Assembly (NCBI RefSeq): GCF_021869535.1
Contig: NW_026262581.1
Location: forward strand, 30,566,001-30,630,000
DNA length: 64,000 nucleotides
DNA from: Mytilus californianus
Taxonomy: Eukaryota
Direction: 5' to 3'
Positions 4,821-58,207 of this stretch are shown here, one piece after another. The notes below the pieces were generated by a model, which saw nothing but the letters and a program-made list of their open reading frames with translations, did not search any database and had not been told where the DNA came from. A program made the translations under genes and the position numbers. The first letter of the stretch is position 1. Each line of letters begins with the position of its first letter.

Positions 4821-7711
4821 GCAATTGACGCGTCATGCCGGTATAAAGTACAAATACTAACAAGACAAGACACACAGTACTCCCATAAACTGAATGCTTT
4901 TTCAAAGCTCAATTAAAATATCAATCAGTACATCTCCAATGGATTTATTGTAAAGTCGTCATAACTTGGCAAAAGATGAGACATTTATAATTATTGTAGA
5001 CCTTTTCTTTTTTCTGTCGCTGGGTTGCTGTCTCATTATTCACATCTTCTTTTATTCATTTGTTTTAACGCTCAACCCACACCTGACCTTGGACAGAAGT
5101 GCAACACCAAAACATGTTTTTTCCCCCGCATTGACATACACGCTTGATTGCAGATGCATGCACATTATAGATGACTGTTGTGATATTGATTTCAATATAA
5201 GTTATTCCATCTGTCATACACATTTAAGTATTATTTTTCATGTTTAACACATGTTGTTTATTACTGTATTCAAAGGCAAATAAATAAAAAAACGATATAA
5301 ACTTAACTTTATTGAGCTTATTTAAAAGAATACCACAACACACTTTATCGACACAAACATTTGGCAATACGGTGATGAGTATTTTTCTTCACACTATGAA
5401 ATATGATGAATATTCATTCTCGCACTTCTTTGTAGTATCAGTATCATCGCAATATGTTACATTTAGACAACAATGTACTTTTGTTTTCAAACAGAATAAT
5501 AACAAATCATTTATGTTAAACCTTATTTGTCTCAAAATGACCATATTTATTGTAGGAGTTTCCGATTCGATTCTATTATGTTTTAAAATTCCTTTGAGTA
5601 TTTCGATCTTCTCTTTTTTTTTAGCAGACACAAACATAATACACATTACAACTGATCAATAAATATATAAACATTTACATTCCTGACATTCCATTCCATT
5701 TCACAAGTATACATATAGTTAGTATGTAAAACATTTACTATGGTATAAAACATTTCATATAATCATTTACAAGTTTTTGTCTCGGATGGTTCCATTTCAA
5801 AATATGCAACATTTGTATGTTCGGTTCGACCCTCTACCAGTCAGCGAATCCTTCCCCTTGTGCCGATAACTAGAACGAACTTTTTTCTTCTTGGATAAGC
5901 TTATGATAACATATAGTAAACACTGCCGTTTCGCTATCAAGAAAGGGAATTGCAGTAAGTCAATCTACACAAATACATTAAACTGATGAAAATGCATTAA
6001 AAATTCTCACAATTGCCTAGACCTCGGAATCTGTTGTCGTCATAGGTCTATTTTCCTTAAATCTCGCATATAAAGTAACAAAGTTTGAGCAATGATTAGA
6101 ATTTAGATCCCTAAAATCGAAAATTACCTGATGTGTGCATGCTTCAATTTATAATGCATGGTATTTTCAATATAAAAATAGACACGAATAACACAAAAAT
6201 GATAAAGTAAACAACTATTAATTATGGCACTAAACATGTAAATAAAATTATTTTTAAAACTTTCTTCCATTGTTTAGAACCCAATGCCGGTATTTTCACC
6301 CATACATACGATTTTTACAGTTTTTTACTCTTAAAAAAAATCATATCTCGAGACATGTTTTTTTGTAGAAATTTCAATAAATTACAGGATTTTAGGAGCT
6401 TCAAAAGGAAGAATATTTCGAATACTGCTTTGCCTTTGAAAATGAATTGATAGGTTGAATAATTGCAGATATCGCATTTGACATTTTTTACCAGGTTATA
6501 TTAAAATTTTCTTCGGTTTGTCATTTCTAACGAGATATTTCATTGAGCTCGATTAAATATCACGTGAGAGTAGAAAATAACATCTCTCTTATCAGCTTCA
6601 TCTGCATTAAATTTTTTAAGTATTCAAATAAAATGTATAATAGTAAAAAATACTAAATATTTGCCAAATTCTTTCAAAACTGTAGTTTACAGTCAAGTAT
6701 AAGAAGGACTGCTTGTGAGGAAATAAACATACTTGAGAAATTAGACCATTTAATATTTTATACTTGTGATCAAGGGTTTACGAAGGAAAGTCGTCATAAT
6801 GACCATTGCTATACAGTGCGCAAGTTCACAACAGTAACAGTTTGATTCTACAAATAACAACAAAACAAAACACTAATAGCCTAATGGCAAGACATTGCAA
6901 TACAAAGCATATAAAACAACTACAAGCCTGGACTCTTTCCTATATAACATTGTACAATCAGTTTTCATTGTAAATATCCACAAGTTTACATTCGGAATAT
7001 AACAAACAGCAAGCGTTTTTTCACATCTCGACTTTTTGAACCAGCTTATCTCCAATTACTACAGAATCTTTATGTGAATTTACAATTTCATGATTGAAGT
7101 TGATAATTCGGGCAATGCTATAGTTAGGTCTAATCAAGTTCGATACTCTAATTTCAAAAGCAATAAGTTATTTTTCTGGCTAAAACAATATCCCATTTTG
7201 ATTAAAATTCCTTTAAACTTTTGAGTTTATAGCCAATAATGCAAAGTCAATGATAGAAAAGGTTAAATTTGTTGATTATATCTTAAAACGCTTCTGCAGT
7301 TATTTGATTAGACGAAGAGAGACGTATGAACTGTCAATGTTAGCTGATGCTACAACTTACTTTTCTATTCACAGATTAATCAGCTAATCATCTAACGAAT
7401 TACTTGAATGTATAATGCGAGGTCACGTTTCATTTCTATTAGATACATAAAATAATTTCATTTCGTTGTAATCTGACTTTGGTATTGATGTTGTAAGAAA
7501 AAATATCTGGTTATAAACCCTGCACACATATAACAACTAAATTCTTGACAATTAACAAAGCACAAATATAAAAGTTTCATTTATATTAATCAAAACGCTT
7601 TTGGCAAATTTTAGAGAATAGCTTTACAAATATCTCTTAAAAAATCTATCGCTAATACAACAAATTGCAATAACTATAAACCTTACACTAATTGTAGTAA
7701 AAAGCATTACA

Positions 7712-9142
7712 CTAAAATAGATACGGAACAATTCTGTGTGGTACTCTCTCGCAATAGTCCGTCCAGAAGGGGCCATACTTCAAACTACATTTGTCGTCGT
7801 CTCGGTAGCTACGGTGCGTTAAGAGTACAGTGAGGAAAATGACGTAAGAAAATGGCATGAAATTCTCAAAGCCTGCTGGTAATGTCCAGAACAAGGCTAA
7901 CAAAATCTCAGGTATGTAGTGGAAATGGCGAGAAAGTCCCCACCATCCGGAGGCTAGAAGTATACTTTCCTTCTCTTGTCCATCCTCAAGCGTATATTTG
8001 GCTCTTATGATGTTCGGTTTCTTTCCCCATATGAGACAATCACCGTCTGCTGATCGCACACGTTGTTTCTGCCAGTCTGCGAAATAATTAACAGAGATCG
8101 CCAGTAGTCCACAGGTTAAAATAAATGTCGACCAGAACCAACCAAGATAAACGGGGTTGTTTACTAGATAGAGGCTAACTGAGGCATATAAAGAAGGTAC
8201 ATATACTAAGCATCCCCAACATATATAATATCCAGCGCGGTCAACCATGATGTCTATTGTGCTTAGATATCCTGCTTCCCACCAAAAGAACTTTGAGATA
8301 TATGCCAATTGCAAAATTGCTGATACGACCATACTATCAACAAATCCATGAAGTTCGTAGCTCTTTAAAGCATGTATATAAACAAGCACGGCCCAAATTG
8401 TCATTCCAAATCTACAATTAGTGAAGACTTTGATGTCAACTCCAAGTACACGAGGATAGAGTTCGGTTCCCCAGTAATAGTCAAATATGATGTTTCCAGA
8501 AGACCCACAGTCAGTTGAAGACGGTGAATATAACCCTTTAATGTATAGAAAGATGCAAAATATAGCACTTAAAACATTAAGTGTTCCGAGAATGTCACCA
8601 AAGTTATCATAAACTACAGATGGCGACAAGTTATACGTCTTAAGAATAACGGTCAAAAGAAATAAAGTAGTCATGGTAACGACATAATGCGAGAATCCAT
8701 TGTCTTTGTAAACTGGAGTGTTTCCTTTTGGAGTAATTGGACCTCTGACCTGCTTTCCTGGTAAAAATTTCATCAACAGTAATGCCCAGATGCAATAGCC
8801 AAATACGACAGAAAGTGCGAAGTTGCTGCAAATATTAACATCTCCCCATAACTCCTTTAAAGAGTCCAACATTGACGCTTGGGTAATGGAATGGACCATG
8901 TTTCCGTAACTCCCTTTGTGTTTTGTAGCTGTGTACCATAACAACATAACGAAATTTGGTGTTGATACCATCAGGAACACAGGAACAAATATTTTATTGA
9001 AAAAATCCCGGTTACGCTGTGTAACACCAATCTTTTCCAATTTTTCATATCCTTCTTTGTAGCCATGGAAACCATTACTCAACATGTCTGATCCCGTTAC
9101 AAGGTCTTGTTGCTTCGAAGCGTTTTCCTTTCTCTTCGACAT
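7712..9142 (-). CDS. DHCR7: Sterol delta-7 reductase (7-dehydrocholesterol reductase), ERG4/ERG24 family, DWF5-like; single coding exon
   Basis: 476-aa uninterrupted multi-TM ORF. Motifs include GPITPKGNTPVYKDNG, DYYWGTELYPR, DIKVFTNCRFGM, KFFWWEAGY, DRAGYYICWGCLVYVPSLY, SGWWGLSRHFHYIPE and RDDDKCSLKYG...YCERVPHRIVP. A splice-acceptor-like tttaattttag lies 7 nt upstream of the ATG (AG at 9151-9150). Confidence 0.93.
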   Translation of the reverse strand: MSKRKENASKQQDLVTGSDMLSNGFHGYKEGYEKLEKIGVTQRNRDFFNKIFVPVFLMVSTPNFVMLLWYTATKHKGSYGNMVHSITQASMLDSLKELWGDVNICSNFALSVVFGYCIWALLLMKFLPGKQVRGPITPKGNTPVYKDNGFSHYVVTMTTLFLLTVILKTYNLSPSVVYDNFGDILGTLNVLSAIFCIFLYIKGLYSPSSTDCGSSGNIIFDYYWGTELYPRVLGVDIKVFTNCRFGMTIWAVLVYIHALKSYELHGFVDSMVVSAILQLAYISKFFWWEAGYLSTIDIMVDRAGYYICWGCLVYVPSLYASVSLYLVNNPVYLGWFWSTFILTCGLLAISVNYFADWQKQRVRSADGDCLIWGKKPNIIRAKYTLEDGQEKESILLASGWWGLSRHFHYIPEILLALFWTLPAGFENFMPFSYVIFLTVLLTHRSYRDDDKCSLKYGPFWTDYCERVPHRIVPYLF

Positions 9143-11101
9143 ATCTTATCTAAAATTAAATCAAACTTAAATAATCGAGAGGGTATATACAGTGCTTTTC
9201 GTCTGGTAAACATCAATCAAAGTGATGAAGTTCGGTGACAAACAGTACTTTTTCTTACTTTGTTGTAATTTTAAGCTTTTTTTATTAATCTGTTGTGTGT
9301 GATGTTGTGTGATAATGGATATTTCTGTATTCGCACTTAATGGTGTAAATGCAAATAGAATTATTTTTAAATTGTTAATTACTAGTAGACTCGAAAGATA
9401 TGATAACAGTCAGATCCTTATCTCAATTTGAGAAGGAAGTGGTTATCTTCTTACAAGGACTGCGTTTCCGGTACGATTTTTAAAAAAAAGCATGTAGCGT
9501 TTATGCAGTGATGCATAGAATTTTCAATCGCATTGATACATGAATTTGGCTATCTTTGATGTCAAATATATGCAGGGGATCCATTCCTAATATCAATTAT
9601 CAAACTCATGCATGGAAGTAATATAATAAATCCATGATTTCTGCAACAATTTTTGAAAAAGACTTCTTTTTCCGTAGAATCAATTGTTTATCTACGTTCT
9701 GAGATATTGACAGTTTTATATAAATGCTGAATTAGAAGTTAACTAGGATTTCAACTCACTCGGGCTAATTTGTAGTCCATTAGATGTTCATTATGTATTT
9801 GGTTTCTCAAACATTTGATGGCCAGCGTTCCTTTGGAGGGAGGGACAATATAGAAATTGGATACTGACGTGCAGTTGGGATTTAAATAAACACCAACATT
9901 TCATAAATTGAAGTTCATTTAAATATTTCAATGAAGCATCTATGTATACCCTCTTTTTTATGCTTGTTAGCTCCCTCCTGGTTGTAAAAACTCAAGGCGT
10001 TCTTAATCAAGATTAACTGAAAATGTGTACAGAATTTTCCAAAAGCTGTGCAGTTTGCTTGTATTACTTCCACCTGTATCAACATTCACTCGTAAAACAC
10101 ATTAGTAAAGTAGAAATAAAAGACAACAGAGGCTCCCGATGCCCAAAAATGAGGTTCTTAGTGTCGCAAATCAAATCGATGGGCGGGAGTGTAGTTAGAC
10201 CTAGACCTGAGCCAGGGCTGAGTGGTGCGTGTGCCCCCAATTTCATTGTTGAAATGGAAGCAAAACTGTGTCATTTTTTTCAAATATATAAATATATATG
10301 CATATCTAATAACCGTGTATAATTAACTTTTCAGTGGCATTTGAAATACATTTTAACAAAGTGCACCTGAGTACTAATTAAAGGATACACGAAAGTTTAC
10401 TTCATGAACTCTCAAAATCCATGTACTTGAAGTATTTTTATCTTCATGTAAAATTATATCATATGCAATTAAAGTAACTAGTTGCTACGTCTACATGTTG
10501 ATATATGTATATATGAAAAATGTAAATTAACTTACAAGCTGTGCATTTATCAGTCCATGTAGATATTTATAAAACATGTACACTCGGCTTGTCGTGTGTT
10601 ATAGCATAAGTTTATACTTATGACGACCTTTTAAGCCATCACATTTCTCGTGTATGATCTCTTATATGACATACCTCGTTTATTAATTTGTCCTTCAGGT
10701 AGAAGCCTCTGGCTCTAATCCTGCACACGACCAGACCAATACACTTCTAAAAAAAGCATAAAAATGTCATCCACTTAACAGATAGCTATGAAAAAGGTGA
10801 TCAAAAGAAAATTCCCTGTCACTAAAAAAAATATTTCAAAAAGAAAAAGCACCACGTTATAACATGTGTCAGTCTGATAAATACTACGAGCAGATTATAC
10901 GAGATAAATCAGAATTATACACAGATATGTATCTTCCTGTTGAGGGAAATGAATGACTATTTATAACTGTATATAATACGTTTTTTGTTATAGAACATTT
11001 CGAACAAAACGCAATTCTTCAGTACTATTACGAACTAAAGCTTTTATCGATCACATGTCCAGTTATAAACAAGAACTGACATGAAAATTGCATTTCCCAT
11101 C

Positions 11102-11735
11102 TCATGGAACAGAAGTTCCTTTAAAATGTAAGTTCTAAATAGAAGAAATATTCTGGACTATTAATTCTACTCGAAGAAATATATCAGTTTTTTTGTTTCT
11201 GACGGAATAAAAAAAGTATAGAATATTTATTCCGACAGTTTATAGCAAAGTTTCCAAAGGAAATTTTGTCAGGTAGAAAGAATATAATTGACTCTCGAAC
11301 ACCATGAAGGGTGGATATGTAGAAATATCATTTTGTCACAAGATCCCACGAGGGTACGGTACATTAGGAAAAAAGTCGGATGTAAAGATTTATATGCTAG
11401 TAAGTCATCTGTCGGATTGCGTTTCCTGTGTCATGGAACGGAAGTTCCTTTTTAATGTAAGTACTAAATGGAAGAAATTTTCCGGAATATCAATTACATT
11501 GGAAGAAAAATTACAGTTTTTTTTGTCCCTGACGGTATTACAACTCAAGTATAGAATATTTATTTCAACAGTTGATAGCAAAGTGTCGATAGGAAATTTT
11601 GTTAGCTGGAACAAATACAATTGACACTCGGACACCATGAAGAGGGGTTAAGAAAACAATAGCATTAGTCACATGATACCATCAGCTAGGATAGTACAAT
11701 GAAAAAAAGTCCGATGTGAAGATTTGTATACAGTC
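11102..11735. repeat. Diverged two-copy tandem duplication, period ~329 bp
   Basis: tcatggaac at 11102 and 11431. The colinear blocks agtatagaatatttatt, ggaaattttgt, acaccatgaag and aaaaaagtc.gatgt.aagattt are shared. Confidence 0.8.
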
Positions 11736-12539
11736 TATTGCCGGATTAAACTTAAGGGATTTTGACACGTGTAACACGAATGTTCTTGTCTTCCTTCCAT
11801 CACTACAGTTAATCAAGTACATTTCAAGTGTCCATGTTCTCTTTGAAGTGTTTTAGTTTAAGTGTTTTACATAACACCAACATTAATATTAGCTTGGCAA
11901 CAGACCACAACTTGGCCTTATCACTTTAACTTCCTTCTTCTTATGTAGAAGTGTTCACTTAACAATATTCATTCTACCGATTTAAGATTGATCGTTTGGT
12001 TGCTATACTTCAGTGGCAACTATTTCAGGCTACTTTAGAACGAACAAGTAAGACCATACAACAGAGTTTTTGATATGCATTGAAAGAGAGAAGACAAAGA
12101 GAAGAACAGCATAATTTTGTCTACCCTGTTGGGACTATTACATTGCATACAATGTATGGCAATTTTTCTGCAAACAAGACCCATACTGGGTTTGCACCTG
12201 CGTCGCTGAATTCAATTGATTGAGGTAACATATACACTGAAACATAACTGATGAAGATGATTTCCAAAACTATGTTCAATTTAACTTCAATTAAAGTACT
12301 TTCAATGATGTAATGTTAAGGGAGAAAATTTTCCTTGTACAATGAGTGTTACAAAATTTCAAACAATCAGCAAACGAGAAATGGTTGCACGGCAGATGTA
12401 AAAATTGCTTATTCGCTATTACTCAACATTATCAACCTCCAGACAAATATAAAAGCATTCCCTTCCATATAGAAGCCAAGGAAATTTTGACAAAAAAAGA
12501 GTATTGTAAAATTTCAAACTATCAGCAAACAGGAAGTGG

Positions 12540-12760
12540 ATGCAAAGCAGTTCTAAAAATTGCTTCCACGCTTCAACACACCAGTATCAAACTTTGACGA
12601 AAGCTATCTACTGGCAAGGTCTTTCGGACGGATGGACGAACGCGGACAGATCGACGGAGTAAGGCGGTTACTAGACTTGCTTTCACTATTAGCGACGAAA
12701 TTAAAATTACTAGCGAAATTTCTAAAAGAAATTGCCTATTTTTTTTGAACTAGTTAAAAT
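12540..12760 (-). mobile_element. Decayed HINE/Helentron-like terminus
   Basis: (GGAC/GGAT)-like microsatellite ggacggatggacgaacgcggacag followed by a terminal block, which is the reverse of the layout at 26255. Confidence 0.3.
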
Positions 12761-13335
12761 CTAGCTTTTTTCTTATGTATTTCTGTTTTCAACAACTTAC
12801 CAAAAAAAAACCTAATAAACATGAAATAGCACAATATACTTAGTGAGTATAAAAACACATCCAAACTGGAAAATATAAAAATGTTGACAGAGTATAATGA
12901 GAGTATATGAATAAATAAATGAATGAATGAATGGATAAATTAAAGATTATTTCTTAAGAACAATTACATTTTTACTAAAAGTTTGTGGGACTGATGAAGG
13001 TAGGGTAATTTTACAAGCCACTGGAAAATGAAGGCCCGAAATTAGCCTTGCAGGAAAAAAAGTTCAACATAAATCGCCTTTTAACAGACAAAGAACGTGA
13101 CATTCTTCTTTTTAATTTTTTCAGTAAAACAGTAACGAGGTCACAGACTGTTCACAGAACGTCCACATATGCACTTAATATTTAGGATCCATTTATACAG
13201 TGTGTAGGTTTCAACTCCATCACGAAAGTCGACATTGGATGGATTTGGTTATTACCTTTATGTCCTTTTTGGTCATATATAGCTTTACAAATGTTTCGGT
13301 TCTCATACATTTTTGACTTTCAAATATTCGGCCTT

Positions 13336-13379
13336 GAACATTCTTGATTGAGGTAAATCCAGAAAAGCGCTTCGGACGC
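13336..13379 (+). ncRNA. Degenerate minimal type-I hammerhead-ribozyme-like motif
   Basis: gaacattc-TTGATTGA-ggtaaatcca-GAAA-AGCGCT-TC-ggacgc. GAAA, the self-complementary stem III (AGCGCT), the UUC cleavage triplet and the 3' stem I strand are intact. The CUGAUGA box is mutated. Confidence 0.5.
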
Positions 13380-14610
13380 ATGAAATTTATAAAGTGTTTT
13401 TTTTTTTATTTTTCCGATACAGTGTGTAGAGGTAGAAATACTCTTCTTCTTATTTTTTGTATAAATAATGCATGTATTAAAAGTTCTAAAAGAGCAGAAA
13501 TGCTAACATTATGTGAAACTATAATGTTATGGATCCATATCATTGTGTACGGATTTTGCCTAATAAGCGATTTTCCCTTTTTCTTCTATCTTTTTTGAAG
13601 TTTTGCATATATATCATATATCAGAGTGAAAATGTCTTACCTTATACGAAATCTTTATAATGTATTAATGTCCTTTTCCAAAATAGTTATGGATTGATAT
13701 ATAAACCTTACTATTCACTATAGCTGTAGGCGCTGAATTCAACAGATGTCATTTTTTCATCGTTTGATCGATAGATCGATCGTTATCATCTGGCGGAGCC
13801 TATTAATAATGCTACCAAGAAAATATTGCTTTCAATATAATAATTTCACAAACCGACAGTGCCTGTAGCAAAATATGTCAGTTTATCACATGATTAATTC
13901 CTTTCAGTATTCAATCTTATACTATTAGGATATTTTTATATTGGATATGATAAAAGTGTCACCTCTGGTCACTTGGTGGGTGAAAATTGGACAATTAAGG
14001 CCTTTATTGTTTACAGTTTATAATTTGACACGAGAAGTTTCATGACTTTTTTCTTGTGGCCTTGTCACTTGAGTTAACGATCATATTTTTTTTTATTATT
14101 GATCTAAAAGGAATGACCACCTTTACCGATCAAGGCAAAAAGACCAACTTTCATATGCACAACAGTAAAAACACACGCAAAAAAAAACTTGCAAAGTATA
14201 TATCAGAAGAATAAGCTTTGACAAATGTGGATCCTATTTTCGTAATGCTAATGACTACTTTATAAAGATAAAGACTGCTGGAAAAATTACAAATTTCAGC
14301 TTAATAATTTCTTGTATTTGTTTATTTATAGGACAAATAGTATCAAACCCCAATACCGCGTGTTTTAGAGTGCTTGGAATGAATCCGAGTTAAGTGTGGC
14401 TTGATAATTTTCGGACTTTGCTCGACATTTAAATTCTAGACCCTCGACACTCCCCCCAAACCACAAAATTAAACAATGAAAAGAAATTTTGAGGTCAATG
14501 TTTTGTCTGAATGTAACAACATTTTCTATTTAAACAGGATTTGGCTGATTTCAGGGCTTTGTTTTGATGCTCTGAGATTTTATGTACTGCATTCCAAACG
14601 TAAAATAGAC

Positions 14611-14648
14611 AGCATACCTGATGAAAGTTCTTCCAAGTAAACCTGTGC
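14611..14648 (+). ncRNA. Third, more decayed hammerhead-like motif
   Basis: agcatac-CTGATGA-aagttcttcca-agtaaacc. The CUGAUGA box is intact and the stem II spacing is similar, but the 3' half is degraded. Confidence 0.3.
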
Positions 14649-15979
14649 AAATTTAACAGAATTCAAAAATTCAAGAAATCAAAGAATTTAGATTTTATTT
14701 TCGTTCTTTTATATTCTAGGTTTCTTTACAAAGGAAAGTGTTAATTGCATGCCGAAACACAGAGGCTCGTATCATAGATGTTTTTGGGTCTGAATTAAGT
14801 GCCATCGACAGGTATGCATTTTAGATTGTGTATGTACGCAATCTAGAACGCATACCAGTCGACTAGCACATATTTCCAATCCAAAATCATCTATGATATT
14901 GACCCCAGTGCCTGAAATGTCATTTCTGTCTCTTCGGTGTTTTGAAAAATGCATTTCTATTTGAAATTCCAATTTCTTTAATGCTTTGATTATACCGAAA
15001 TGTTAACCACTTTGCTTGATACTAATTTTTTTGGTGACCTTGGGTGTAATATGACTAAACTATTGAAACCAAATTACTCATCCTCATCCACGATAGAATC
15101 ACTTTTAACGGAATCATCTTCGTTGCAGCTTTGTTTTTAAAAGTTCGACGACTCAGTGGTCGATCATCCGAATGACATCCAAATGACATTAGCATGCGTT
15201 TCACGGCGCCTCTTTTTCAAACACAAGACACGAAAGAACTATATAGCTCGACTACACGTTGATAATAACGCTGACAAATTGAATCCCCTAATGTAACATT
15301 ATTATATTTATTAGCTGGACCGGTTTTTCAGTAATGATGTTGTGTTGTGTTTGGGATATTTATCGTTCCATTATTGGAATATAATAAAATTGTCTGGCTT
15401 TCGGACTTCTATGAATTGATTAATGCAGATGAAGATGTAAGAGACGTGGTTAGGATCAATATTACTCCAGCATGATTTTCAGTTTATTAAGACTGTATAA
15501 TATGAAGACTAAAAGGTTTTTTAGAAACATCAGTAACGATGCATTTTGTCTAGGTTTTGTGCAGTGTTCATACTATAATTTTAGAAAATCTATTGTCTTT
15601 GGTTAAAATTAAGGAAAATTGAAACAAATGATGGAATTACCAACACTGAAATTATTTTCAGATACAGAATGCTCAGGCCAAACAAATAAGTATGTGAACG
15701 ATTTCCTCCTTTAGAAAAATAGGGTTGATACGTAAGTTTTTAACCTTGAGTATATTAGAACAATCTGCAATTTTCAGTTCAAAAAAGGAAATTAATTTTT
15801 GTTCAAGGTAGGCATCTTGGGTTTTATAAGGAATGAAGATGAAACACTTAACACAAGAACAAGAATAGCAGGTAAGAGCTGAAAATAAGTTTGCACAAGG
15901 CACGATGAACATGAATATTCCGCAACACAAAATGTCGGAAATAATTGTGTACAAAAGTGTAAATAAAGCTTCGGAAAAA

Positions 15980-16070
15980 ATGCGAAGCAACAGATGAAAA
16001 TGATATATAGTCAATCCGCAACCCCCCCCCCCCCCCCGCCACCACCCGAATTTCAAATGTTTGTCCCCCT
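15980..16070 (-). mobile_element. Terminus-like block of an unclassified dispersed repeat (shared with 49644-49722 and its copies)
   Basis: Minus strand agggggacaaacatttga...G-run...gcggattgactatatatcattttcatctgttgcttcgcat versus atgggacgaccattcga...G-run...gcggattgactatttatttttatctgttgctacgtat. Confidence 0.6.
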
Positions 16071-17794
16071 TGCACATTGCATAGTTGTAGCCGTAGATGC
16101 TATATGATAGCTGACTTTTGTTAAAGTTTTAGCTAAAAGTGATCTATGTGTACTGTTGTTATCAATGTAAGCTGGCTGTATGCATGGAGTTGTTACTTCT
16201 ATTTGAGGTGATTGTGAATCTTTCCTTAGTAAATGTCTGCAATCATCGCAATTCAACTTTTTAAAGAATACAACAGTTTTATATCTATTCTGTAATTTCA
16301 AACGGTTCTCTTTAAACATCTTTAATTGTGAATAAAGTGACCCCTGCTAGTCTGAGTCTTAACTTTGTTCGCGTTTTCCGCACAATTTAAAACATTCCCG
16401 TACAAACATATATTTAATGCATCATCCAGGTTCAATCATCTGGATTTATCACGACTGCTGCCTCTCACACACGTGTGCATACATTTTTGGCAAATAAAGC
16501 ATTATTGCATTAATGATTTAATAATTACAAACTTATGTTCATTTCGCATTATACTTAAAATTTGTTGGGGCAATCGCTGGGTATAAACTTCTTTGTTAAT
16601 TTCTAAGGATATATTAGTGGCAAAAAGAATGATTGCCCCGAAGTAGAGTAAAATACGACTTTTGAATGTTATCATTATAAAAAAATATTTTTCTATAATT
16701 TATATGACGAATATGCTTAAATGTTCCTAACAGCAGTGCATGCGCATGATGCACCTTACTAACATATAATAGACAAAAAATTATTAAAGAAAATCTTAGA
16801 GAGAATTTTCCATCTGAATATATAATCGTCAAATTTGCCAGTATATATGCCTTAAAAAATAGACAAAAAAACGTCTTATGTATAAAATTCGAATTTCCTT
16901 ATTTACTCAAGTGGCAAACTGCGAGCAGAATTAACAATTTCAAACGCCCTGCTCTCATCATCTGAAAATCCATCCTGTCACTAATTTAGGATTAGTTGAT
17001 GGACAGAAAATGCCTACTACTGCTTGTCATGTTTGCGGAATGGATAAGTCTATTGGAATCTCCAAAAATTAATCGGATCTAAACATAATAACAGATGCGA
17101 AATGATATTATGCAATAGATATAGATGATAAAGAATTTATGTTTGGTATGATCAAGGAGGTTGTTACAACTCCTTCATTAGTATGATGTTGGCTCAGTAT
17201 ACCCATGGGTATATAACAAATTCTGGTAAACCAAGATTTCTAAAGCTCTGTGACTGTAATAAATATTTCCATTTTAGAATACTAAATGTATACACCTTCT
17301 CTTCACCCCCCCCCCCCCCCATGAAAAAAAAATTGTCATGTTTGCAGTTATTGCTAAGTACATATTTGCTAGAGGGAACCACAAATGTCAATGAGATAAA
17401 TAAAAAGTACATGAAATGGCAATATTTTCTGAAGTTTTTTCTGAGAATTTTAATCAAATCTAGCAAGCGGTTTAAGAACAGTAACATTCACAGAGAGCTG
17501 GGACGATCGATCAAACGAACCCACGCCCGGATAGCATAAGGTTTCAAAATAAAAGACACCATTTATAAAATATCATCGTCGTAGCCAGAAAACAAAGTTT
17601 TAGCATGAAGCAATAAAACAATAATGAATGGCAATTAAATGCTCTTCCTATGTTCTTTCCTAAATGCATCTGTTACTAAATACTCAGCTCCTTAATTTAT
17701 GTATGTTGATATACATAATGTTTCAGTTTCCATCAACACGTTAAATTGGTATCGCTAAATCCGATGCCTCGTGTAAGGTGAATGTAACGCTTTC

Positions 17795-18412
17795 AGCACG
17801 TAAAAGAACCTCCGGCAACATTTCTCTGAGTGGTCCGTATATACGTGTTTTTGCAAGCGTTCTGCATGTTAAAGAACCCTTGCAACAACTCTCTGAGTTG
17901 TTCGTGTACACGTGTTTTTGCAAGCTTTCTGTACGTAAAAGAACCCTTGCAACAACTCACCGAGTGGTCCGTATACTAATACCACGTGTTTTTGCAAGCT
18001 TTCTCCACGTTAAAGAACCCTTGCAACAACTCTCTGAGTTGTCCTTTTACACGTGTTTTTGCAAGCTTTCTGTACGTAAAAGAACCCTTGCAACAACTCA
18101 CCGAGTGGTCCGTATACTAATACCACGTGTTTTTGCAAGCTTTCTGCACGTTAAAGAACCCTTGCAACAACTCTCTGAGCGGCATGATATACATGTTTTT
18201 GCAAGCTTTCTGCACGTGAAAGAACCCTTGCAACAACTCACCGAGTGGTCCGTATACCACGTGTTTTGGCAAGCTTTCTTCAAGTAAAAGAACCCTTGCA
18301 ACAACTCTCTGAGTTGTCCGTGTACACGTGTTTTTGCAAGCTTTCTGTACGTAAAAGAACCCTTGCAACAACTCACCGAGTGGTCCGTATACACGTGATT
18401 TTGCAAGCTTCC
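17795..18412. repeat. Minisatellite of ~9 units with alternating 67/74-bp monomers (141-bp higher-order repeat)
   Basis: Core aagaacccttgcaacaact starts at 17872, 17939, 18013, 18080, 18154, 18220, 18288 and 18355 (spacings 67, 74, 67, 74, 66, 68, 67). The A units (ctctgagttgtcc) and B units (caccgagtggtcc) alternate. Confidence 0.97.
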
Positions 18413-19203
18413 TGTCCCTATTCAATTGCAACATTACTCCTTTCAAGTGACCGCCTAAATGTCTGGCATTTCATCCAGTCCAGTCTTCTCTGTGAAAAAC
18501 CTTTCTATAGTATTTATTATTATTTTGTTTTCGTCCTGAATATGCATGAAATATTTGCCACTGGACTTTAATCAAACAACAATCAATCAATTGATTCACA
18601 CTGTTTGTTTCTTACTAGTCAGATAATAAACTGGACATTGAATACATCAAATATACATGAATTTACCTTTATGTAAACGTAAATTCAGTCCGAGAACTCG
18701 TACCCGTTCCACCGATATTGCATCTGTTAAAATTGGTCGTGTCTTTTTTTAATTATATATTTAAAGTACTGAATTTCTTCTACTGAGAAACTTTTCAAAT
18801 TTTTAAGAGGTGTTGTATCATTAAACATTATTTAGACAATGTGCAAAGTTAGTCGTTAAAAACTAATAAAACACATTTAAATAAATGCGAAATAGACGAT
18901 CGTTTAGAATATATAAATCAATAAATGACTTTTTCTAAATCTAGATTCTTCACGCATATTGGGTGAATTTCAAGTAGGATATAAGAGCCACTGAGAAAGA
19001 ACGAAAAACACGAATGCTTTATTGTGTTGTTTAATCTAGGTACGTGACGAATTGTTCTGGTTACACGTGACGAATAGTTCTGCAACAGCATGAAATTTTG
19101 TTTGCTTCATTTTGATTTGAAAAAAGTTAAACAGGTTAAGACAATGGTTTGATGGGGTTCGCGTTTCTCAGTCTTTAGTCTTTGAATGTAGTGTATTAAA
19201 TAT

Positions 19204-19545
19204 AAAAAGAAGATGTGGTATGATTGCCAATGAGACAACTATCCACAAGAGACCAAATGACACAGAAATTAACAACTATAGGTCACCGTACGGCCTTCAA
19301 CAATGAGCAAAGCCCATACCGCATAGTCAGCTATAAAAGGCCCCGAAATAACAAATGTAAAACAATTCAAACGAGAAAACTAAATGCCTAATTTATGTAC
19401 AAAATAATAAACGAAAAACAAATATGTTACACAGCAACAAACGACAACCACTGAATTACAGGCTCCTTACTTGGGACAGGCACATACAGAATGTTGCGGG
19501 GTAATACTGGTTTGAAGCCCCCCCCGCCCTTAACCTGGGACTTAA
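19204..19545 (+). mobile_element. High-copy interspersed repeat, family A (unclassified; recalled as a typical Mytilus repeat), nested in another repeat
   Basis: aagatgtggtatgattgccaatgagacaact...ggtcaccgtacggccttcaacaatgagc...ccactgaattacaggctcc. Near-identical copy at 45592 and partial copies at 57430, 58465 and 61230. Confidence 0.85.
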
Positions 19546-20411
19546 TTATAGACAGTATTTTGTTCTTTCTTTATTTATCGTTTTACTCATGGTTTTGTAT
19601 GTCTTTCTTCGACTTGCGAGATTTGATTGTACATCTGGTATCTTCCGCCTCTTTTTAACGTATATTGTCGAAATTGTTACCTAGCAAGAAACCACAAAAG
19701 AAGTAAATTAGTTACGTAATCTAAATTCATGATATTCACACACACAAATAATTTAATTCCCCTTAAGATATCGTGTTTTCGTACATATTCATCCTCCTTT
19801 AAAAAACTATTTAAATATACATTTATTTACGAAACGGGTTTCAAACCTAGGACTACAATGTTTAAAAGGTAGGTTGTGATTTTCTCATCAAATGATGTCT
19901 ATCAAATTAACAGGAGAAGGTAATCTAAAAGAACAAAAAGTACATATATTGAATCTGTTATCCGCTTTGATGAGAACCTATATCATGATGACATAGATCT
20001 ACACCTCGCCACGTATTTAAATGTACTAAATAGCCATTTAACAGTGCCATTTAAGCGAGTGTCATTATAATCCTCTAATTCATTGCTATTAGCATAATTT
20101 TCAGCTTATTAATCAAAATTACCATACAGCGGACGTATTTTAAATGTATTTATACAGAAATATATCGAATACAACGAAAATCACACAACTACGACAGATG
20201 AGATATTTTACCAACTTGGTTGGAATACAATGTATACTCTCTTCTTTTACTTGAGAAAAATTCACCTATATATTATGCGGGAACTTGGTCCCGTCTTTGT
20301 AATCTGTGTTGTAGTCTTTCTTTCATGATTTTATCAATTCTTTTTGCGGGGAACTGCTCATATTGATGTTACATTATTTGGGAACTAGCTTGGACTCGGC
20401 ATGACAACGGG

Positions 20412-20969
20412 ACCTTAAAAGACAATCCAGTCTGCTAACTACATTTTTATTCTGGTTCACAGTCTAATCTTATTTACAACAGTTACAATACAAATTACAT
20501 TTCTTTTCCCAACATAGTTATACACCAAATATTCCGCGATCTAAATCGAACAATAATACAAAACCCGACAATAGTATATACGCGCCATAAATGAACAGTC
20601 AAGTCATTTGTTATCTCCACTTAACTCGTTTACTTTTAATATTTAATCAAGTATCAAAATAAGAATTGTATTTTCAAAAGTTATCTTTACAAAGAAGTTT
20701 AATATCCTTTTTATAAGTTAAGAACCTTTTATTTAAATCATTTACCTTAATATTATTTTTAACTTTGCCTATAATTTATTTAATCTATATCACGATTTTA
20801 CTTGCGAATATGAATAAAATTTACTTTACTGGAAAACATCTTTTAAATCTTTAAACTCATTTCTTCTAAATTTATAAAAGCAATCTATCAAACAACAGTA
20901 AAATATTTACTAACCTTAAAAGACAATCCAGTCTGCTAACTACATTTTTATTCTGGTTCACAGTCTAAT
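20412..20969. repeat. Perfect 57-bp direct repeats flanking a 444-bp AT-rich segment
   Basis: accttaaaagacaatccagtctgctaactacatttttattctggttcacagtctaat is identical at 20412-20468 and 20913-20969. Confidence 0.97.
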
Positions 20970-23900
20970 GAACCAAATAATTTTGCACGACTTTATATAG
21001 CAGAACTGGACTTCATCTGACACGTGAATATTTTGTTACTCAGTACAATAGTTTTCTTTGATCTATTCTAAATAAACAATGAAATATCGGATAAGGGTAG
21101 AATTACTTAATCTTAATTGTTCAAGTCTATTAATTTCAAAAGTATGTATAATTATCTTTATGCCTTCTAAGCTGACACATTTATCAATTAGCCGGGGAAT
21201 ATGTTTGAGACAACGTTATTAAATATGTTTTAAAAGATAAAACACTTACATGATAATTTTAGGAAATTGTTCTATACACAAATTAAACTTTCTTAAACTT
21301 GTTTTATTTGTTTTATTTACGTTCATTTCTTGGTTTACTTATTTTGTAATAAATATTCTCCTTAACTTCTGTGCATTTTTCCATTATTTAACAAAACTTT
21401 ACTTGTAATTTATTAGTAAATACTATCTTTAAATATCACGCATTTTTGCATCATTATATATATAGTTATAAGATTCTATATGTACGTACAGTCTAAAAGT
21501 GTACATTTTGCCCACGTTTCTTTGGAAGAAATGTGACTGCCATATGTTCAAGCGATTTTCAACCAAAAAAATGTTTACATTTTAAACACCAGAAACAGAA
21601 CTTATTTAAAGAATTATAAACAATCAGTCAGAAAATATAACCAAAAGTTCTTGTCATAGAAATTCGATGAAAAATCCCGATCCCTTTGAATTACAAATCA
21701 TTCGAGTATATATTATGCGTAACATTTCAAAGTGTTATTGTCAGTCTCATTGGCAATTTTCGTATAGCTCTGAAATAAGCACTGCTATTAAATGTAATCA
21801 ATAACTATTAAGCAAAGATTCTATCAGGGGAAATTGTATTCAAATAATTTTGCTCCAGCATTACAAATGTCAAATTATACCGAACGGGCAATCAGGGACC
21901 AACATTAACTATGTGTGTAATAATTTACACCGGAAGTAAAGCCACCAACAATCAATCAGTTTTTGTCACAAATTTGATAAATTACTACGCACTTCAACTT
22001 ACTTCTCATTCAAGATATTCTCTGTGCACATTTATACATCACATAAGCAACAAAATACCAACATTTTATTTTGCGCATATTTAGAACCGTCTTTGAAAAT
22101 CTCGAGAACTAGTACAAATGTAGTCTTTAAAAGGTTTGTCAGTTCGGTGGTATATGTATATTAATGAAATTTCAACAAAATAGGTTGGAATCGCATTCCA
22201 TTTTATTTTTTTGTCACAGTATGTACTTCAAATCGTGTTTTTACGGCAATGCTTAAAAAGTTTGATTGAGCTAATATTTCATGCCCGTTTGTCATACAGG
22301 ACAATGGACAAAGTTTAAAAAAACAGTCACACACACAAAATTGAGTCAAATTCCAGTGACGTTATTTAATGTCGGTATCTATTGTGACCACCATGTGCGG
22401 CTAACACTTTTCTACATCTCCTTAGCATCGATCGAATCAACTTTTTGATTATTCGTACTTGTGATATCCTTTGACATTCATATTGCAATTTTGACCGAGT
22501 TGGTCTAATGATTGACTTGGGGGTTAGCGTTGACGGACGCGTCTATCAAGTTCGACCCATAGATGTTCTATGAGGTTCAATTCTGGTCATGGCAATACAA
22601 TATTTGATGTTGTTCTGTGTAAGGAAATAATGTATATTATATACGTGGGTATCTTTGCTGTATTGGGCCGAGCTTTGGCCTGCTGAAAAATCTCCCTCTG
22701 ACATTGAACCAGTTTTATACGCGATAGTTTCACGGTGATTTAATAACAAGTTTCTTGTGGAATACACAAACAATTTGTCTTGCACACTATAACCGCAACC
22801 TTCATTTTTCAGGTCTTATATAAAAATACACTTGCGGCGAGTTTCGAAAATACTCGTACCGGCATTTTGTATTTTAAATACTAGTACACTTTTAATTACT
22901 CGCTTACATATTTAGATATTTAATACCATTTTTATTTATTCATTTTCAAATACAAGTATATTTAAAAAATCTGACATGTTTGTTTCCTTTTTAGCAGAGC
23001 ATATTTTTGATTAGTTACACGTGCATTTTTGTTAAAGTTTAATATAGGTATGTTTAAACAAAGACAAAGTAAAAAAGCAATCTTTTTTTCATTTTAAATA
23101 GTATGTTATTTGAATATTCGCCCATCGATACAGACTGTAATATAGCTTCAACTTAAGAGAAGAATGGTCATTTAAATATTAAATTTGCAACCGCATACTT
23201 TTAGGTAATAATGTAAAAAAATTGTACTTACTAAACACAACAGAGTCGTTCCTTTTTCCTGTTCTCTTCGATGCAATATAAAAATTCGATTCAATCAACT
23301 GATTCTATTGTACATTGACATACACACACACAAAGAAACTTCTGCTAATGTGATTAAACAAGTAATGGGGTGATCGTCATCTTCCAGTCAGCTGCTTAAT
23401 TTGCATGATGATTCATCCCGCACGCGCATATTTTCAGTCTCATAGTTTTTCTCGCTTAGCCGTGAAAAACGTCTGAAAAACTGTGGAATAGCATATCATA
23501 TATTGTGCTTTGTATTTCTTAATAATAATTGCTAAATGGAGATGTTCAAATAAATGTTTTCACAGTTAATTAATATTATCAGTGATAACAATAATTACTG
23601 CTGAATGGTAGCGATGGGACATTGATGAATATGTCTGTATCGATCAGAGAGGAGAAAAACGCTTTTTCATTCATTATAATTGATTCTATGGTAATGAACA
23701 AGACTAATACAGTTAATGATACATGGTTACAAAATATTTAAACGAGATAGAAGGAAAATTATATCATGGAAAAACTGAAAGATATATTTATATAGAGATT
23801 GAAAAATAAGAATAAATTAATTCTAATTATCGTGTAAGTAAATACTAGTGCTGTAGCTTGTTGCAAATATAAATCATAAACAAACACAAAAATTGATTTG

Positions 23901-39400: not shown

Positions 39401-39479
39401 TATCTTTGTAGACCGACGTCAATCCATGAACATTCCAACATAAACATTTTAATTTACAAAATTGTTCTCTGGGTTTGTC
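36440..39479 (-). pseudogene. LINE ORF2 (AP endonuclease, reverse transcriptase, CCHC knuckle), disrupted
   Basis: APE motifs: CWNVHGL, FLSETW, CGDLNSRIG, SDHMPI. RT motifs: FRPIVL, QFGFRPGRST, FVDFRKAFD, GVKQGEPLSP, LFADD, YLG. C-terminus: CICCNMNVLEDEYHFVLSC. There is an in-frame TAA at 38171-38169 (RKF*S, where FW is expected) and an apparent internal deletion with frame change near 36720. Confidence 0.93.
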
Positions 39480-57068: not shown

Positions 57069-57395
57069 TTATTTTTTGAATGCATGAAATAATTGTCCAC
57101 AAGCCTCGCAACATGGTACACAACAACAGTTAACTAATGTAGCATAGATTCTCTGGCAAAGTCCGCAGTTGATTTCGAAGATTTTCATGCATGGAGAAAT
57201 TATCCAGATATGGTAGAAAGCGATAATAGCAAATTCACATCCCCATTCAGCAGCAATACAGATACCGTAGAAAATGGTCATAATGTTGTAACAAAGCAGC
57301 TTCCAGCAGTCGAAACATTTGGCTGATATTTTCCATACGCAATCGATACTGTGTATCCCATCAGGTTCACCAAAAACGTCATTGAAATGCAAAGT
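57069..57395 (-). CDS. CAV: Caveolin, last coding exon (108 aa plus stop)
   Basis: Acceptor gttttattctattccag (AG at 57397-57396), phase 0. The exon begins TLHFNDVFGEPDGIHSIDCVWK, matching the caveolin signature FEDVIAEPEGTHSFDGVWK. It continues with CYNIMTIFYGICIAAEWG...FYHIWIISPCMK, QRIY and PCCEACGQLF. Confidence 0.93.
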   Translation of the reverse strand, partial: TLHFNDVFGEPDGIHSIDCVWKISAKCFDCWKLLCYNIMTIFYGICIAAEWGCEFAIIAFYHIWIISPCMKIFEINCGLCQRIYATLVNCCCVPCCEACGQLFHAFKK

Positions 57396-58207
57396 CTGGA
57401 ATAGAATAAAACATATATATATAAATAAATAGATATGGTATGATTGCAAATGAGACAACTATCCACCAGAGTTCAAATGAAGTAAATGTAAGCATTTATG
57501 GGCAACCGTACGGCCTATATATACATATTTGTTTTCGCGAAGAAGCACGTTACCTTGTAAAATCGGATTACTGTTTGAAAAGAGATATACGTTCGTGTAA
57601 AACAGCGTTTATTATAAATGTCATGCTTGTGTGCACATAAAAAAATATAACTTGTACGAATACATTTCAGAGACAGATTCTGGTAGTAAATTTTGAGCAA
57701 GTCAGAGTTCAGGTTAACTTTGTTGAACACTTTGGGTCAAAGAACGCTTTGAAAAAAAGTTGAAGGTAGCATAAAATTTAACTGTAGTTTGAGAACTCAA
57801 TTTCGATTGACATATTTCAAATACTTATTTTATCTTTAAAGTAAGATATTTGACATTGGACAAATTATCAAATGCTTAATGAAAACGATAATCAATTACG
57901 ATTATTAGTTCTTGATAGAAACTGACTATTCATTAATTATTTAAATGGCACTCCGATTAAACATGTTAAGTCATTCACATGTAGTTGTCGCTTAGTTACA
58001 AGAAAAACAGATTTCCAAAACATAACTAGATGTTTCTTATTTATCTTTGAGATAATGAAACTAGTAAGCTTAAAAAATAATAAGAATTAAATAGTAAATC
58101 CGTATATAAATTTACAATAAAGTCAAATCACACAGTGCACAATCTTTGCCACCTATACTTCTCAAGTTATCTTGTTCCAATACTAAACTTTTTTTTCTTG
58201 ACACAAT

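What the first reader, a model, noticed from the sequence alone, without database searches (positions are those of the whole stretch)
7712..9151. Intronless plant/DWF5-type sterol delta-7 reductase in an animal genome
Seen: a single-exon 476-aa CDS with DIKVFTNCRFGM, KFFWWEAGY, DRAGYYICWGCLVYVPS and GWWGLSRHFHYIPE, plus an acceptor-like AG 7 nt before the ATG, suggesting a spliced 5' UTR. Host-type repeats flank it, which argues against contamination. Established (sequences recalled from memory): these motifs are nearly identical to Arabidopsis DWF5 (DIKVFTNCRFGM, KFFWWEAGY, DRAGFYICWGCLVWVPS) and to sterol reductases of Coxiella/Legionella-type bacteria. They differ from human DHCR7 (DFKLFFNGRPG, DFFWNETWY, DHFGWYLGWGDCVWLPY). 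Inference: either horizontal acquisition (the intronless CDS fits a bacterial, viral or retro-mediated route) or an ancient paralogue lost in vertebrates. Bivalves accumulate delta-5,7 sterols and eat 24-alkyl algal sterols, so a DWF5-type enzyme could serve dietary sterol remodelling.
Basis: partly seen in the sequence, partly recalled or inferred. Interest (0 to 1): 0.72.

Follow-up and report, generated by a model that had tools for sequence, protein, structure and literature searches.

The report
Mussel plant-type sterol delta-7 reductase gene
This is the mussel's own expressed gene for the enzyme that removes the C7 double bond of sterols. It belongs to an old lineage shared by molluscs, worms and probably arthropods that resembles the plant and bacterial enzymes rather than the vertebrate one. 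It is therefore not contamination or a recent gene transfer, but its deep origin is an open question.

Summary
An intact 476-aa single-exon ORF lies at 7712-9142 (-). It is an ERG4/ERG24 sterol reductase (Pfam 4.8e-69; AF2 model matches 4QUV, TM 0.93). RNA reads show it is transcribed from the minus strand. They confirm a GT-AG intron (9150-10674) ending 7 nt before the ATG, and point to a second 5'UTR intron reaching an exon at about 23232. It is a host gene, not contamination.

The genome is a Mytilus. The gene is the only delta-7-type reductase found there; the three other family loci are C14-reductase-like. Orthologues at 54-65% identity occur in molluscs, annelids and nemerteans. Their coding regions are also intronless (Pecten, Octopus, Capitella, Lineus).

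The motifs match plant DWF5 and bacterial homologues (46-59% identity), not deuterostome DHCR7 (31-34%). Deuterostome DHCR7 forms a strongly supported clade with fungal and amoebozoan enzymes. Forcing lophotrochozoans to join deuterostomes is rejected (AU p=1e-5). Lophotrochozoans join arthropods (100/99) in a reduced tree. Their next neighbours, bacteria or plants, are unresolved.

The event is ancient and covers lophotrochozoans, probably all protostomes. Ancient transfer versus old paralogue remains open.

The parts
7712..9142 (-). [quoted passage not shown]
   Evidence: ORF. PF01222 4.8e-69 over residues 58-476. AF2 pLDDT 89.4. Foldseek 4quv TM 0.93. RNA depth 10-25 on the gene strand only.
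9143..9149 (-). Seven 5'UTR bases between the splice acceptor and the ATG (start of the coding exon)
   Evidence: Joint 9149->10675 in runs X21, X1, X2 and X5.
9150..10674 (-). 5'UTR intron, 1525 nt, GT..AG on the gene strand
   Evidence: Joint 'skips 1525, CT..AC' in 4 runs of 4 studies. Single-copy in the genome.
10675..10746 (-). Non-coding 5'UTR exon, 72 nt
   Evidence: Covered by reads and contigs. It is bounded by the joint at 10675 and by a loose end at 10746 with AG (CT on +) at 10747-10748.
10747..23231 (-). Second 5'UTR intron, about 12.5 kb (inferred); holds a dispersed repeat at about 12324-12542
   Evidence: The loose-end letters beyond 10746 match 23245-23262 exactly. They follow a GTAAGT donor (ACTTAC on +, ending at 23231). 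No read was laid directly across this intron, because the stretch given to read laying ended at 13000.
23232..23262 (-). 3' end of the first (non-coding) exon; its 5' end and the promoter were not mapped
   Evidence: The reads differ from the assembly by a small indel here, probably allelic.
5362..7711 (-). 3'UTR, about 2.3 kb; its end is approximate
   Evidence: Continuous same-strand depth runs from 7711 down to 7001, the edge of the laid stretch. Contig X1 record 1 (3830 nt) extends 1639 nt further. AATAAA lies at 5313-5308 on the gene strand.

Best explanation
The window holds the mussel's own, functional, single-copy gene for an ER-membrane, NADPH-dependent sterol delta-7 reductase of the DHCR7/DWF5 orthogroup in the ERG4/ERG24 family. 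It has three exons: two short non-coding 5' exons and one exon carrying the whole CDS and a long 3'UTR. The enzyme most likely reduces the C7=C8 bond of delta-5,7-sterols, such as 7-dehydrocholesterol and possibly 24-alkyl delta-5,7-sterols from algae, to delta-5 sterols. The gene has been inherited vertically at least since the common ancestor of molluscs, annelids and nemerteans, with an intronless coding region throughout. It probably shares a single protostome clade with the arthropod gene. This lineage is separate from the deuterostome+fungal+amoebozoan DHCR7 clade, and no gene of that clade was found in this genome. For the deep origin I commit to the following inference, which is not shown: an ancient pre-Cambrian replacement of the opisthokont-type gene, in the protostome stem, by a DWF5/bacterial-type gene acquired horizontally (about 45%). 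Sorting of an old paralogue is about 30%. Two separate acquisitions, one in lophotrochozoans and one in arthropods, are about 10%. The intronless CDS fits either a bacterial donor or a later retroposition.
For: Identity and integrity. The motifs LLxSGWWGxxRHFHY and RxxRDDxKCxxKYG are invariant or nearly so across 51 sequences. Among 10 SNPs in the CDS, 6 are synonymous and 4 are not. Expression and host linkage: stranded RNA and two spliced 5'UTR exons. Only delta-7-type gene in the genome: the PF01222 scan finds it plus three multi-exon loci with C14-reductase HPNYLGD-type motifs. A hemichordate DHCR7 query hits this gene best and nothing new. Distribution: 54-65% identical orthologues in molluscs, annelids and nemerteans. 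The CDS is contiguous in Pecten, Octopus, Capitella and Lineus, and Patella residues 2-489 lie in one exon. Separate from deuterostome DHCR7: the deuterostomes+fungi+Acytostelium clade has 100/100 support, and lophotrochozoa+deuterostomes is rejected with dlnL 332 and AU p=1e-5. Protostome clade: 100/99 in the 56-row PMSF tree, and not rejected in the 97-row set (p=0.25). Closeness to bacteria and plants: 46-54% identity to 421 bacterial species genomes; ML sister to bacteria at 73/64 or 88 under LG+G4. A mytilid DHCR7 transcript is localised in gill epithelium (PMC5421315).
Against: No enzymatic assay exists for any protostome member. Substrate and even bond specificity are inferred from family membership. 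The backbone of the tree is unresolved and changes with model and sampling. Lophotrochozoa+bacteria without arthropods is not rejected (p=0.158). Nor is a single clade of all animal, fungal and amoebozoan sequences (p=0.065). The trees are unrooted, with no C14/C24 outgroup. Non-bilaterian animals, most ecdysozoans and most spiralian phyla were not sampled with names. Absence of the opisthokont-type gene was tested in this one genome only. Many tree rows are unnamed metagenome or transcriptome representatives.
Confidence: 0.8

Rival explanations
1. Ancient paralogue: two delta-7 reductase paralogues coexisted from an early eukaryote, or at least the opisthokont ancestor, to the bilaterian ancestor. 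Protostomes kept the DWF5-like copy. Deuterostomes, fungi and amoebozoans kept the other. No transfer is involved.
For: The arthropod members have introns. One cockroach intron (after the residue aligned to K146, phase 0) is at exactly the position and phase of a Hevea DWF5 intron. Two more arthropod introns lie within 3-4 nt of Hevea introns: tick at codon 304 versus Hevea codon 303, both phase 1, and cockroach G399 versus Hevea W400. This hints at eukaryotic rather than bacterial ancestry. A single clade of all Amorphea sequences is not quite rejected (p=0.065).
Against: It needs many independent losses of the DWF5-like copy (fungi, amoebozoans, deuterostomes, and probably cnidarians according to bioRxiv 10.64898/2026.05.06.723128). 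No genome with both types was seen. The deuterostome-type clade nests among other eukaryotic lineages as an ordinary Amorphea orthologue would. The intron matches are few: one exact match out of four.
Confidence: 0.3
2. The intronless coding region arose by retroposition of a spliced mRNA of an intron-bearing DWF5-type parent in the lophotrochozoan ancestor, and the copy then picked up upstream non-coding exons. This can be combined with either deep origin.
For: The whole CDS is in one exon while both introns lie in the 5'UTR, a common retrogene layout. Arthropod relatives in the same clade have introns. No parent copy remains. The barnacle CDS is also intronless, so intron loss recurs.
Against: No poly(A) remnant or target-site duplication can be expected after more than 500 My, and none was looked for. 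A bacterial donor explains intronlessness equally well. The arthropod introns could be later gains.
Confidence: 0.35
3. Lophotrochozoans alone obtained the gene from intracellular bacteria (Chlamydiota, Legionellales, Coxiellaceae or similar). Arthropods obtained theirs separately or by descent.
For: The best tree of the 97-row set joins lophotrochozoans to a monophyletic bacterial clade (73/64; 88 under LG+G4). Identity to bacteria is 46-54%, against 33-42% to arthropods. The CDS is intronless. Lophotrochozoa+bacteria without arthropods is not rejected in the 56-row set (p=0.158).
Against: With long unnamed branches removed, lophotrochozoans join arthropods at 100/99. Lophotrochozoans are sister to bacteria, not nested within them, so direction is undetermined. 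Published work argues that the bacteria received the gene from eukaryotes (PMC2667531, PMC2817430). Lophotrochozoans and P0122 carry a 2-residue insertion (KTYNLSP region) that bacteria lack.
Confidence: 0.15
4. Contamination of the assembly, or a recent mussel- or bivalve-specific horizontal transfer.
For: Only the first impression: an intronless CDS with plant- and bacterial-like motifs.
Against: The CDS is spliced to two upstream exons across 1.5-kb and 12.5-kb introns on a 126-Mb-class chromosome-scale contig. It is 95% identical to the M. edulis protein, with graded orthologues through three phyla. CDS GC is 0.40 against 0.33 for the window.
Confidence: 0.01
5. A true orthologue of vertebrate DHCR7 whose separate placement is a tree artefact.
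For: Deep branches are long and the models are imperfect. The deuterostome-type clade sits on a very long stem (1.65 substitutions per site).
Against: AU p=1e-5 and dlnL 332 against lophotrochozoa+deuterostomes. Deuterostomes share many derived states with fungi and Acytostelium that protostomes lack. No intron positions are shared between the starfish and cockroach genes.
Confidence: 0.05

Closest known systems
Host DHCR7 of the deep-sea mussel Bathymodiolus platifrons (Takishita et al. 2017, PMC5421315)
   Same: Same family of mussels (Mytilidae) and, by the description there (groups with Crassostrea and Lottia DHCR7), the same gene. It is transcribed in gill epithelium and placed at the last step of cholesterol formation.
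   Different: That study used 15 taxa. In the text I read, it did not address gene structure or the relation to plant, bacterial and deuterostome enzymes. No enzyme assay was done.
Plant sterol delta-7 reductase DWF5 (represented here by Hevea brasiliensis P0128)
   Same: Near-identical signature motifs, and 56-59% identity over the part of the Hevea model that is present. Same fold family.
   Different: The plant gene has at least 10 coding introns; the mussel gene has none. The mussel protein has a disordered N-terminal tail of about 45 residues. Specific sisterhood with plants is not supported.
Bacterial DHCR7-like reductases (Legionella drancourtii, Coxiellaceae, Parachlamydiaceae, Myxococcota, Bacteroidota; PMC2667531)
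   Same: 46-54% identity over the full length, intronless, same motifs. They are the nearest neighbours in several trees.
   Different: Bacterial proteins start at the first membrane helix and lack the 2-residue insertion of the lophotrochozoan proteins. Their role in bacteria is unknown.
Vertebrate/deuterostome DHCR7 (mouse P0363, starfish P0399)
   Same: Same orthogroup name and presumed reaction. Same 10-helix ERG4/ERG24 architecture and C-terminal NADPH motifs.
   Different: Only 31-34% identity. Different versions of all four motifs. A separate, strongly supported clade with fungi and a dictyostelid. A multi-exon CDS with introns at other positions.
MaSR1, delta-14 sterol reductase of Methylomicrobium alcaliphilum (PDB 4QUV)
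   Same: The only close solved structure: phmmer 1.1e-58, and Foldseek TM 0.93, rmsd 2.4 A, 30% identity.
   Different: It acts on the C14 double bond and belongs to another branch of the family.

Membership tests
ERG4/ERG24 sterol reductase family (PF01222) | Full-length match to the family profile above the curated cut-off | tested here: met
   233.6 bits against a cut-off of 27; profile positions 17-432 of 432.
ERG4/ERG24 sterol reductase family (PF01222) | Ten-helix membrane fold with a C-terminal NADPH-binding half | tested here: met
   AF2 pLDDT 89.4, pTM 0.87. Foldseek 4quv E 7e-22, TM 0.93. C-terminal motifs conserved.
DHCR7/DWF5 (delta-7) orthogroup within the family | Closest relatives are delta-7 reductases rather than C14 (ERG24/TM7SF2/LBR/FK) or C24 (ERG4) reductases | tested here: met
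   All named relatives among the best hits are called 7-dehydrocholesterol reductase. The genome's other three family loci carry C14-type HPNYLGD motifs and are only 25-50% identical on short stretches. No explicit outgroup-rooted tree was made.
DHCR7/DWF5 (delta-7) orthogroup within the family | NADPH-dependent reduction of the C7=C8 bond of delta-5,7-sterols | not testable with these tools
   Needs expression and GC-MS.
Deuterostome/fungal/amoebozoan ('vertebrate-type') DHCR7 clade | Branches inside the clade that holds vertebrate DHCR7 | tested here: not met
   That clade has 100/100 support without lophotrochozoans. The forced union is rejected, AU p=1e-5.
Plant DWF5 clade | Specific sister relation to Viridiplantae sequences | tested here: inconclusive
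   The motifs are nearly identical, but the trees place plants, bacteria and protostomes on an unresolved backbone.
Horizontally acquired gene | Strongly supported conflict with the species tree | tested here: met
   Protostome sequences are excluded from the deuterostome+fungi clade.
Horizontally acquired gene | Recipient nested inside a donor clade, giving donor and direction | tested here: inconclusive
   At best sister to bacteria (73/64). Bacteria are paraphyletic with weak support. The trees are unrooted.
Horizontally acquired gene | Physically part of the host genome and expressed | tested here: met
   Spliced to host exons.
Retrogene | Intronless CDS derived from an intron-bearing parent, with recruited 5' exons | tested here: inconclusive
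   The layout fits and intron-bearing relatives exist in arthropods. However, no parent copy or insertion hallmark is available.

The most novel reading that the evidence does not exclude
Before the protostome radiation, animals of that lineage replaced the ancestral opisthokont DHCR7 with a horizontally acquired plant/bacterial-type delta-7 sterol reductase. The donor was perhaps an intracellular bacterium of the Chlamydiota/Legionellales kind, or an alga. On this reading the last step of cholesterol formation, or of dietary sterol salvage, in molluscs, annelids, nemerteans and arthropods is run by a xenologue of the vertebrate enzyme.
Probability: 0.4. Interest if true: 0.75.

Novelty: new member of a known kind. 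Interest (0 to 1): 0.55.

Why it matters
The enzyme class is well known, and the mussel gene is already annotated as DHCR7-like. The unexpected part is the split among animals. Deuterostomes share their DHCR7 with fungi and amoebozoans. Molluscs, annelids, nemerteans and probably arthropods use a lineage that looks like the plant and bacterial enzyme and is intronless across Lophotrochozoa. I found no paper stating this; the library searched is limited. If it holds, three things follow. Inferences carried from vertebrate DHCR7 to invertebrates, such as inhibitor sensitivity, substrate range and regulation, need retesting. Claims of 'HGT of DHCR7' in single animal groups, such as corals in bioRxiv 10.64898/2026.05.06.723128, need a family-wide frame. 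And the case gives a concrete way to test ancient gene replacement in animal sterol metabolism. A plant-like enzyme could also accept 24-alkyl delta-5,7-sterols. That bears on how filter feeders and sterol-auxotrophic arthropods process algal sterols.

Tried and rejected
- Rfam at gathering thresholds on window 1-26000 gave no hit.
- The ESM Atlas feature search returned only the family, with no lineage information.
- The giant-virus route is not supported: one IMG/VR hit at 40% identity.
- The first searches for the upstream exon with the 30-nt read consensus failed in the window and in the genome. The reads differ from the assembly by a small indel; an 18-nt piece located the exon.
- Naming unnamed representatives by cluster look-up was mostly unproductive. 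P0122 is a divergent relative that shares the lophotrochozoan 2-residue insertion. Its organism stays unknown and it has no contig on record.
- The LG+G4 tree suggested a clean sister relation of bacteria and lophotrochozoans. I did not adopt it because the site-heterogeneous model and reduced sampling changed the picture.
- Intron positions gave no shared intron between the starfish (deuterostome-type) and cockroach genes.
- The complex-prediction tool was not used; no binding claim is made.
- dN/dS between species was not computed.
Full report
**Observation**

The window has one long ORF in the stated place: 7712..9142 on the minus strand, 476 aa, ATG start. It matches Pfam ERG4_ERG24 over almost the whole profile (4.8e-69). 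It also matches the solved bacterial sterol reductase MaSR1, 4QUV, over its full length (1.1e-58). An AlphaFold2 model built on a 51-sequence alignment is confident (pLDDT 89.4, pTM 0.87; only residues 1-32 are disordered). It superposes on 4QUV with TM 0.93 and rmsd 2.4 A. The C-terminal motifs that line the NADPH site in this family (LLxSGWWGxxRHFHY and RxxRDDxKCxxKYG) are invariant or nearly so.

**Transcript and host linkage**

I laid one raw stranded RNA-seq run and three contig sets, from four studies, on 7001-13000.
- Depth is continuous from 7001 to 9149 and lies on one strand only.
- All four runs show the same joint, 9149->10675. It skips 1525 nt with CT..AC on the plus strand, which is GT..AG for the gene.
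- The upstream exon is 72 nt (10675-10746) and is itself preceded by an acceptor.
- The read letters beyond it match 23245-23262. They sit next to a GTAAGT donor at 23231/23232.
- A first non-coding exon therefore lies about 12.5 kb upstream. This last junction is inferred from loose ends; no read was laid across it.
- A 3830-nt contig implies a 3'UTR of about 2.3 kb. An AATAAA lies at 5313-5308.
- Ten SNPs fall in the CDS: six synonymous and four not.

This is an expressed host gene, not contamination.

**Genome context**

The protein is 95% identical to a Mytilus edulis protein, so the genome is a Mytilus. A six-frame scan of the whole 1.65-Gb assembly with PF01222 finds this gene and three multi-exon loci. 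Those loci are only 25-50% identical on short stretches. They carry the LLVSGWWG..RHPNYLGD motifs of C14 reductases of the LBR/TM7SF2 kind. A hemichordate DHCR7 used as query hits the window gene best (6.6e-79) and then the same three loci. The window gene is therefore the only delta-7-type reductase found in this genome.

**Distribution and gene structure**

Proteins 54-65% identical, mostly named 7-dehydrocholesterol reductase(-like), occur in bivalves, gastropods, cephalopods, annelids (Capitella, Paralvinella) and nemerteans (Lineus, Tubulanus). In Pecten, Octopus, Capitella and Lineus the gene range equals the CDS length and translates directly. In Patella, residues 2-489 lie in one exon. 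The intronless coding region is thus a shared feature of Lophotrochozoa, not of mussels.

**Affinities**

Identity to the mussel protein:

| Group | Identity |
|---|---|
| Bacterial homologues | 46-54% |
| Plant-clade sequence | about 47% |
| Hevea model, over the part present | 56-59% |
| Arthropods | 33-42% |
| Deuterostomes | 31-34% |
| Fungi | 30-31% |

Relatives occur in 421 bacterial species genomes. These include Chlamydiota, Legionellaceae/Coxiellaceae, Verrucomicrobiota, Bacteroidota, Myxococcota and Spirochaetota. A profile of the 'vertebrate-type' representatives retrieves vertebrates, amphioxus, hemichordates and a starfish. It also retrieves early-diverging fungi, an aphelid, Acytostelium, and a EukProt entry 'Sdes' that I take, from memory, to be an ichthyosporean. 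Arthropods of all major groups have their own DWF5-like clade: barnacle, ostracod, springtail, mite, tick, centipede, termite and cockroach.

**Trees**

The 97-row tree used LG+C20+F+G4 (PMSF) with ultrafast bootstrap and SH-aLRT. The backbone between the supported clades is unresolved.

| Clade (97-row tree) | Support |
|---|---|
| Lophotrochozoans | 97/100 |
| Bacteria | 96/91 |
| Plants | 97/94 |
| Arthropods | 97/88 |
| Deuterostomes + fungi + Acytostelium | 100/100 |

Tests of forced groupings:

| Grouping | Data set | Result |
|---|---|---|
| Lophotrochozoans + deuterostomes | 97 rows | rejected, dlnL 332, AU p=1e-5 |
| Lophotrochozoans + arthropods | 97 rows | not rejected, p=0.25 |
| All animal, fungal and amoebozoan rows | 97 rows | borderline, p=0.065 |
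| Lophotrochozoans + bacteria | 97 rows | present in the ML tree at 73/64 |
| Lophotrochozoans + bacteria, no arthropods | 56 rows | not rejected, p=0.158 |

A plain LG+G4 tree gave lophotrochozoans+bacteria 88. After removing long unnamed branches, the 56-row tree under the same mixture model joins lophotrochozoans, the unnamed P0122 and arthropods at 100/99. Bacteria are weakly supported neighbours of that clade.

My reading is as follows. The separation from deuterostome DHCR7 is solid. A single protostome lineage is likely. The next-nearest group (bacteria, plants or other eukaryotes) is not settled. The trees are unrooted.

**Introns**

- The cockroach gene has three coding introns, at the equivalents of K146 (phase 0), 278 (phase 0) and G399 (phase 1).
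- The tick gene has one, in codon 304 (phase 1).
- The barnacle CDS has none.
- The starfish deuterostome-type gene has introns at 46, 120 and 322.
- The Hevea gene has at least ten.
- One Hevea intron is at exactly the cockroach K146 position and phase. Two lie 3-4 nt from the tick and cockroach introns.
- None matches the starfish positions.

This is a modest hint that the arthropod branch descends from an intron-bearing eukaryotic gene. If so, the lophotrochozoan form would be a retrocopy or the product of intron loss.

**Function and origin**

From family membership, fold and conserved cofactor motifs, the protein most likely reduces the delta-7 bond of delta-5,7-sterols with NADPH in the ER. 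A mytilid orthologue is transcribed in gill epithelium and was assigned that step (PMC5421315). Activity and substrate range are not shown for any protostome member.

The deuterostome-type clade includes fungi and amoebozoans and nests among other eukaryotes. The simplest account is that it is the vertical Amorphea gene, and that protostomes replaced it by an acquired DWF5/bacterial-type gene. I put this at about 45%, including donor uncertainty. An old paralogue with differential loss is about 30%. Separate acquisitions in lophotrochozoans and arthropods are about 10%. Recent transfer or contamination is excluded.

**Literature**

Earlier work links the Chlamydia, Coxiella and Legionella genes to plants, or to Naegleria, and argues for eukaryote-to-bacterium transfer (PMC2667531, PMC2490706, PMC3220658, PMC2817430). 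A 2026 preprint calls coral DHCR7 a transfer from fungi (10.64898/2026.05.06.723128). In the frame found here, that may simply reflect the deuterostome/fungal type; I did not check it. Six searches found no paper on the protostome placement or on the intronless structure.

**Verdict**

The gene itself is an ordinary, annotated, vertically inherited host gene. The notable point is the deep split of animal delta-7 reductases and the lineage-wide intronless structure, which deserve a proper phylogenomic study.

Noticed in passing
window 36705-40664 (-): Three consecutive long ORFs of a non-LTR (LINE-type) retrotransposon. ORF 39480-40664 has no clear domain and only a weak coiled-coil-like match. 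ORF 38169-39422 has an Exo_endo_phos endonuclease domain (2e-6). ORF 36705-38117 has an RVT_1 reverse transcriptase domain (8.8e-34). The open frames suggest a young copy.
   Followed up: partly
window 57069-57458 (-): An ORF of 129 aa matches Caveolin (PF01146, 1.8e-30). It is probably an exon of a host caveolin gene.
   Followed up: no
window 12324-12542: A short dispersed repeat inside the second 5'UTR intron. RNA reads and several contigs map here with many different flanks and loose ends, and with a 156-nt 'joint' 12350->12507 seen in two runs. It is expressed from other copies or as part of another transcript.
   Followed up: no
window 23232-23262: RNA reads of two studies differ from the assembly in the first exon by a small indel (reads TAAAACACAACAGTCG, assembly TAAACACAACAGAGTCG). 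This is probably allelic variation.
   Followed up: partly
G000 C110:69364843-69379891 (+); C165:30274248-30313179 (+); C165:12879361-12886597 (-): Three multi-exon ERG4/ERG24 loci with C14-reductase-type motifs. Two lie on the same chromosome and look divergent (CRHPNYLSD, SRHPNYLGD). An animal is usually expected to have LBR and TM7SF2, so a third copy is notable.
   Followed up: partly
L112 (Amphibalanus), L110 (Periplaneta), L115 (Hyalomma): Arthropods, which cannot make sterols de novo, keep a DWF5-like delta-7 reductase. The barnacle CDS is intronless, the tick has one intron and the cockroach has three spread over 34 kb.
   Followed up: partly
P0156 (EukProt Sanchytrium tribonematis) in the tree: A sequence labelled as a sanchytrid fungus branches with chelicerate sequences inside the arthropod clade. 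Its contig name shows coverage below 1, so it may be a contaminant in that transcriptome.
   Followed up: no
P0353 (Acytostelium) in the trees: The dictyostelid DHCR7 sits inside fungi next to Mortierella (100/97), which looks like a fungus-to-amoeba transfer or contamination.
   Followed up: no
window 1-26000: Another first-stage note reports decayed hammerhead ribozymes at 1070-1113, 13336-13379 and 14611-14648. Rfam at gathering thresholds finds nothing in this stretch. That does not exclude decayed copies.
   Followed up: partly
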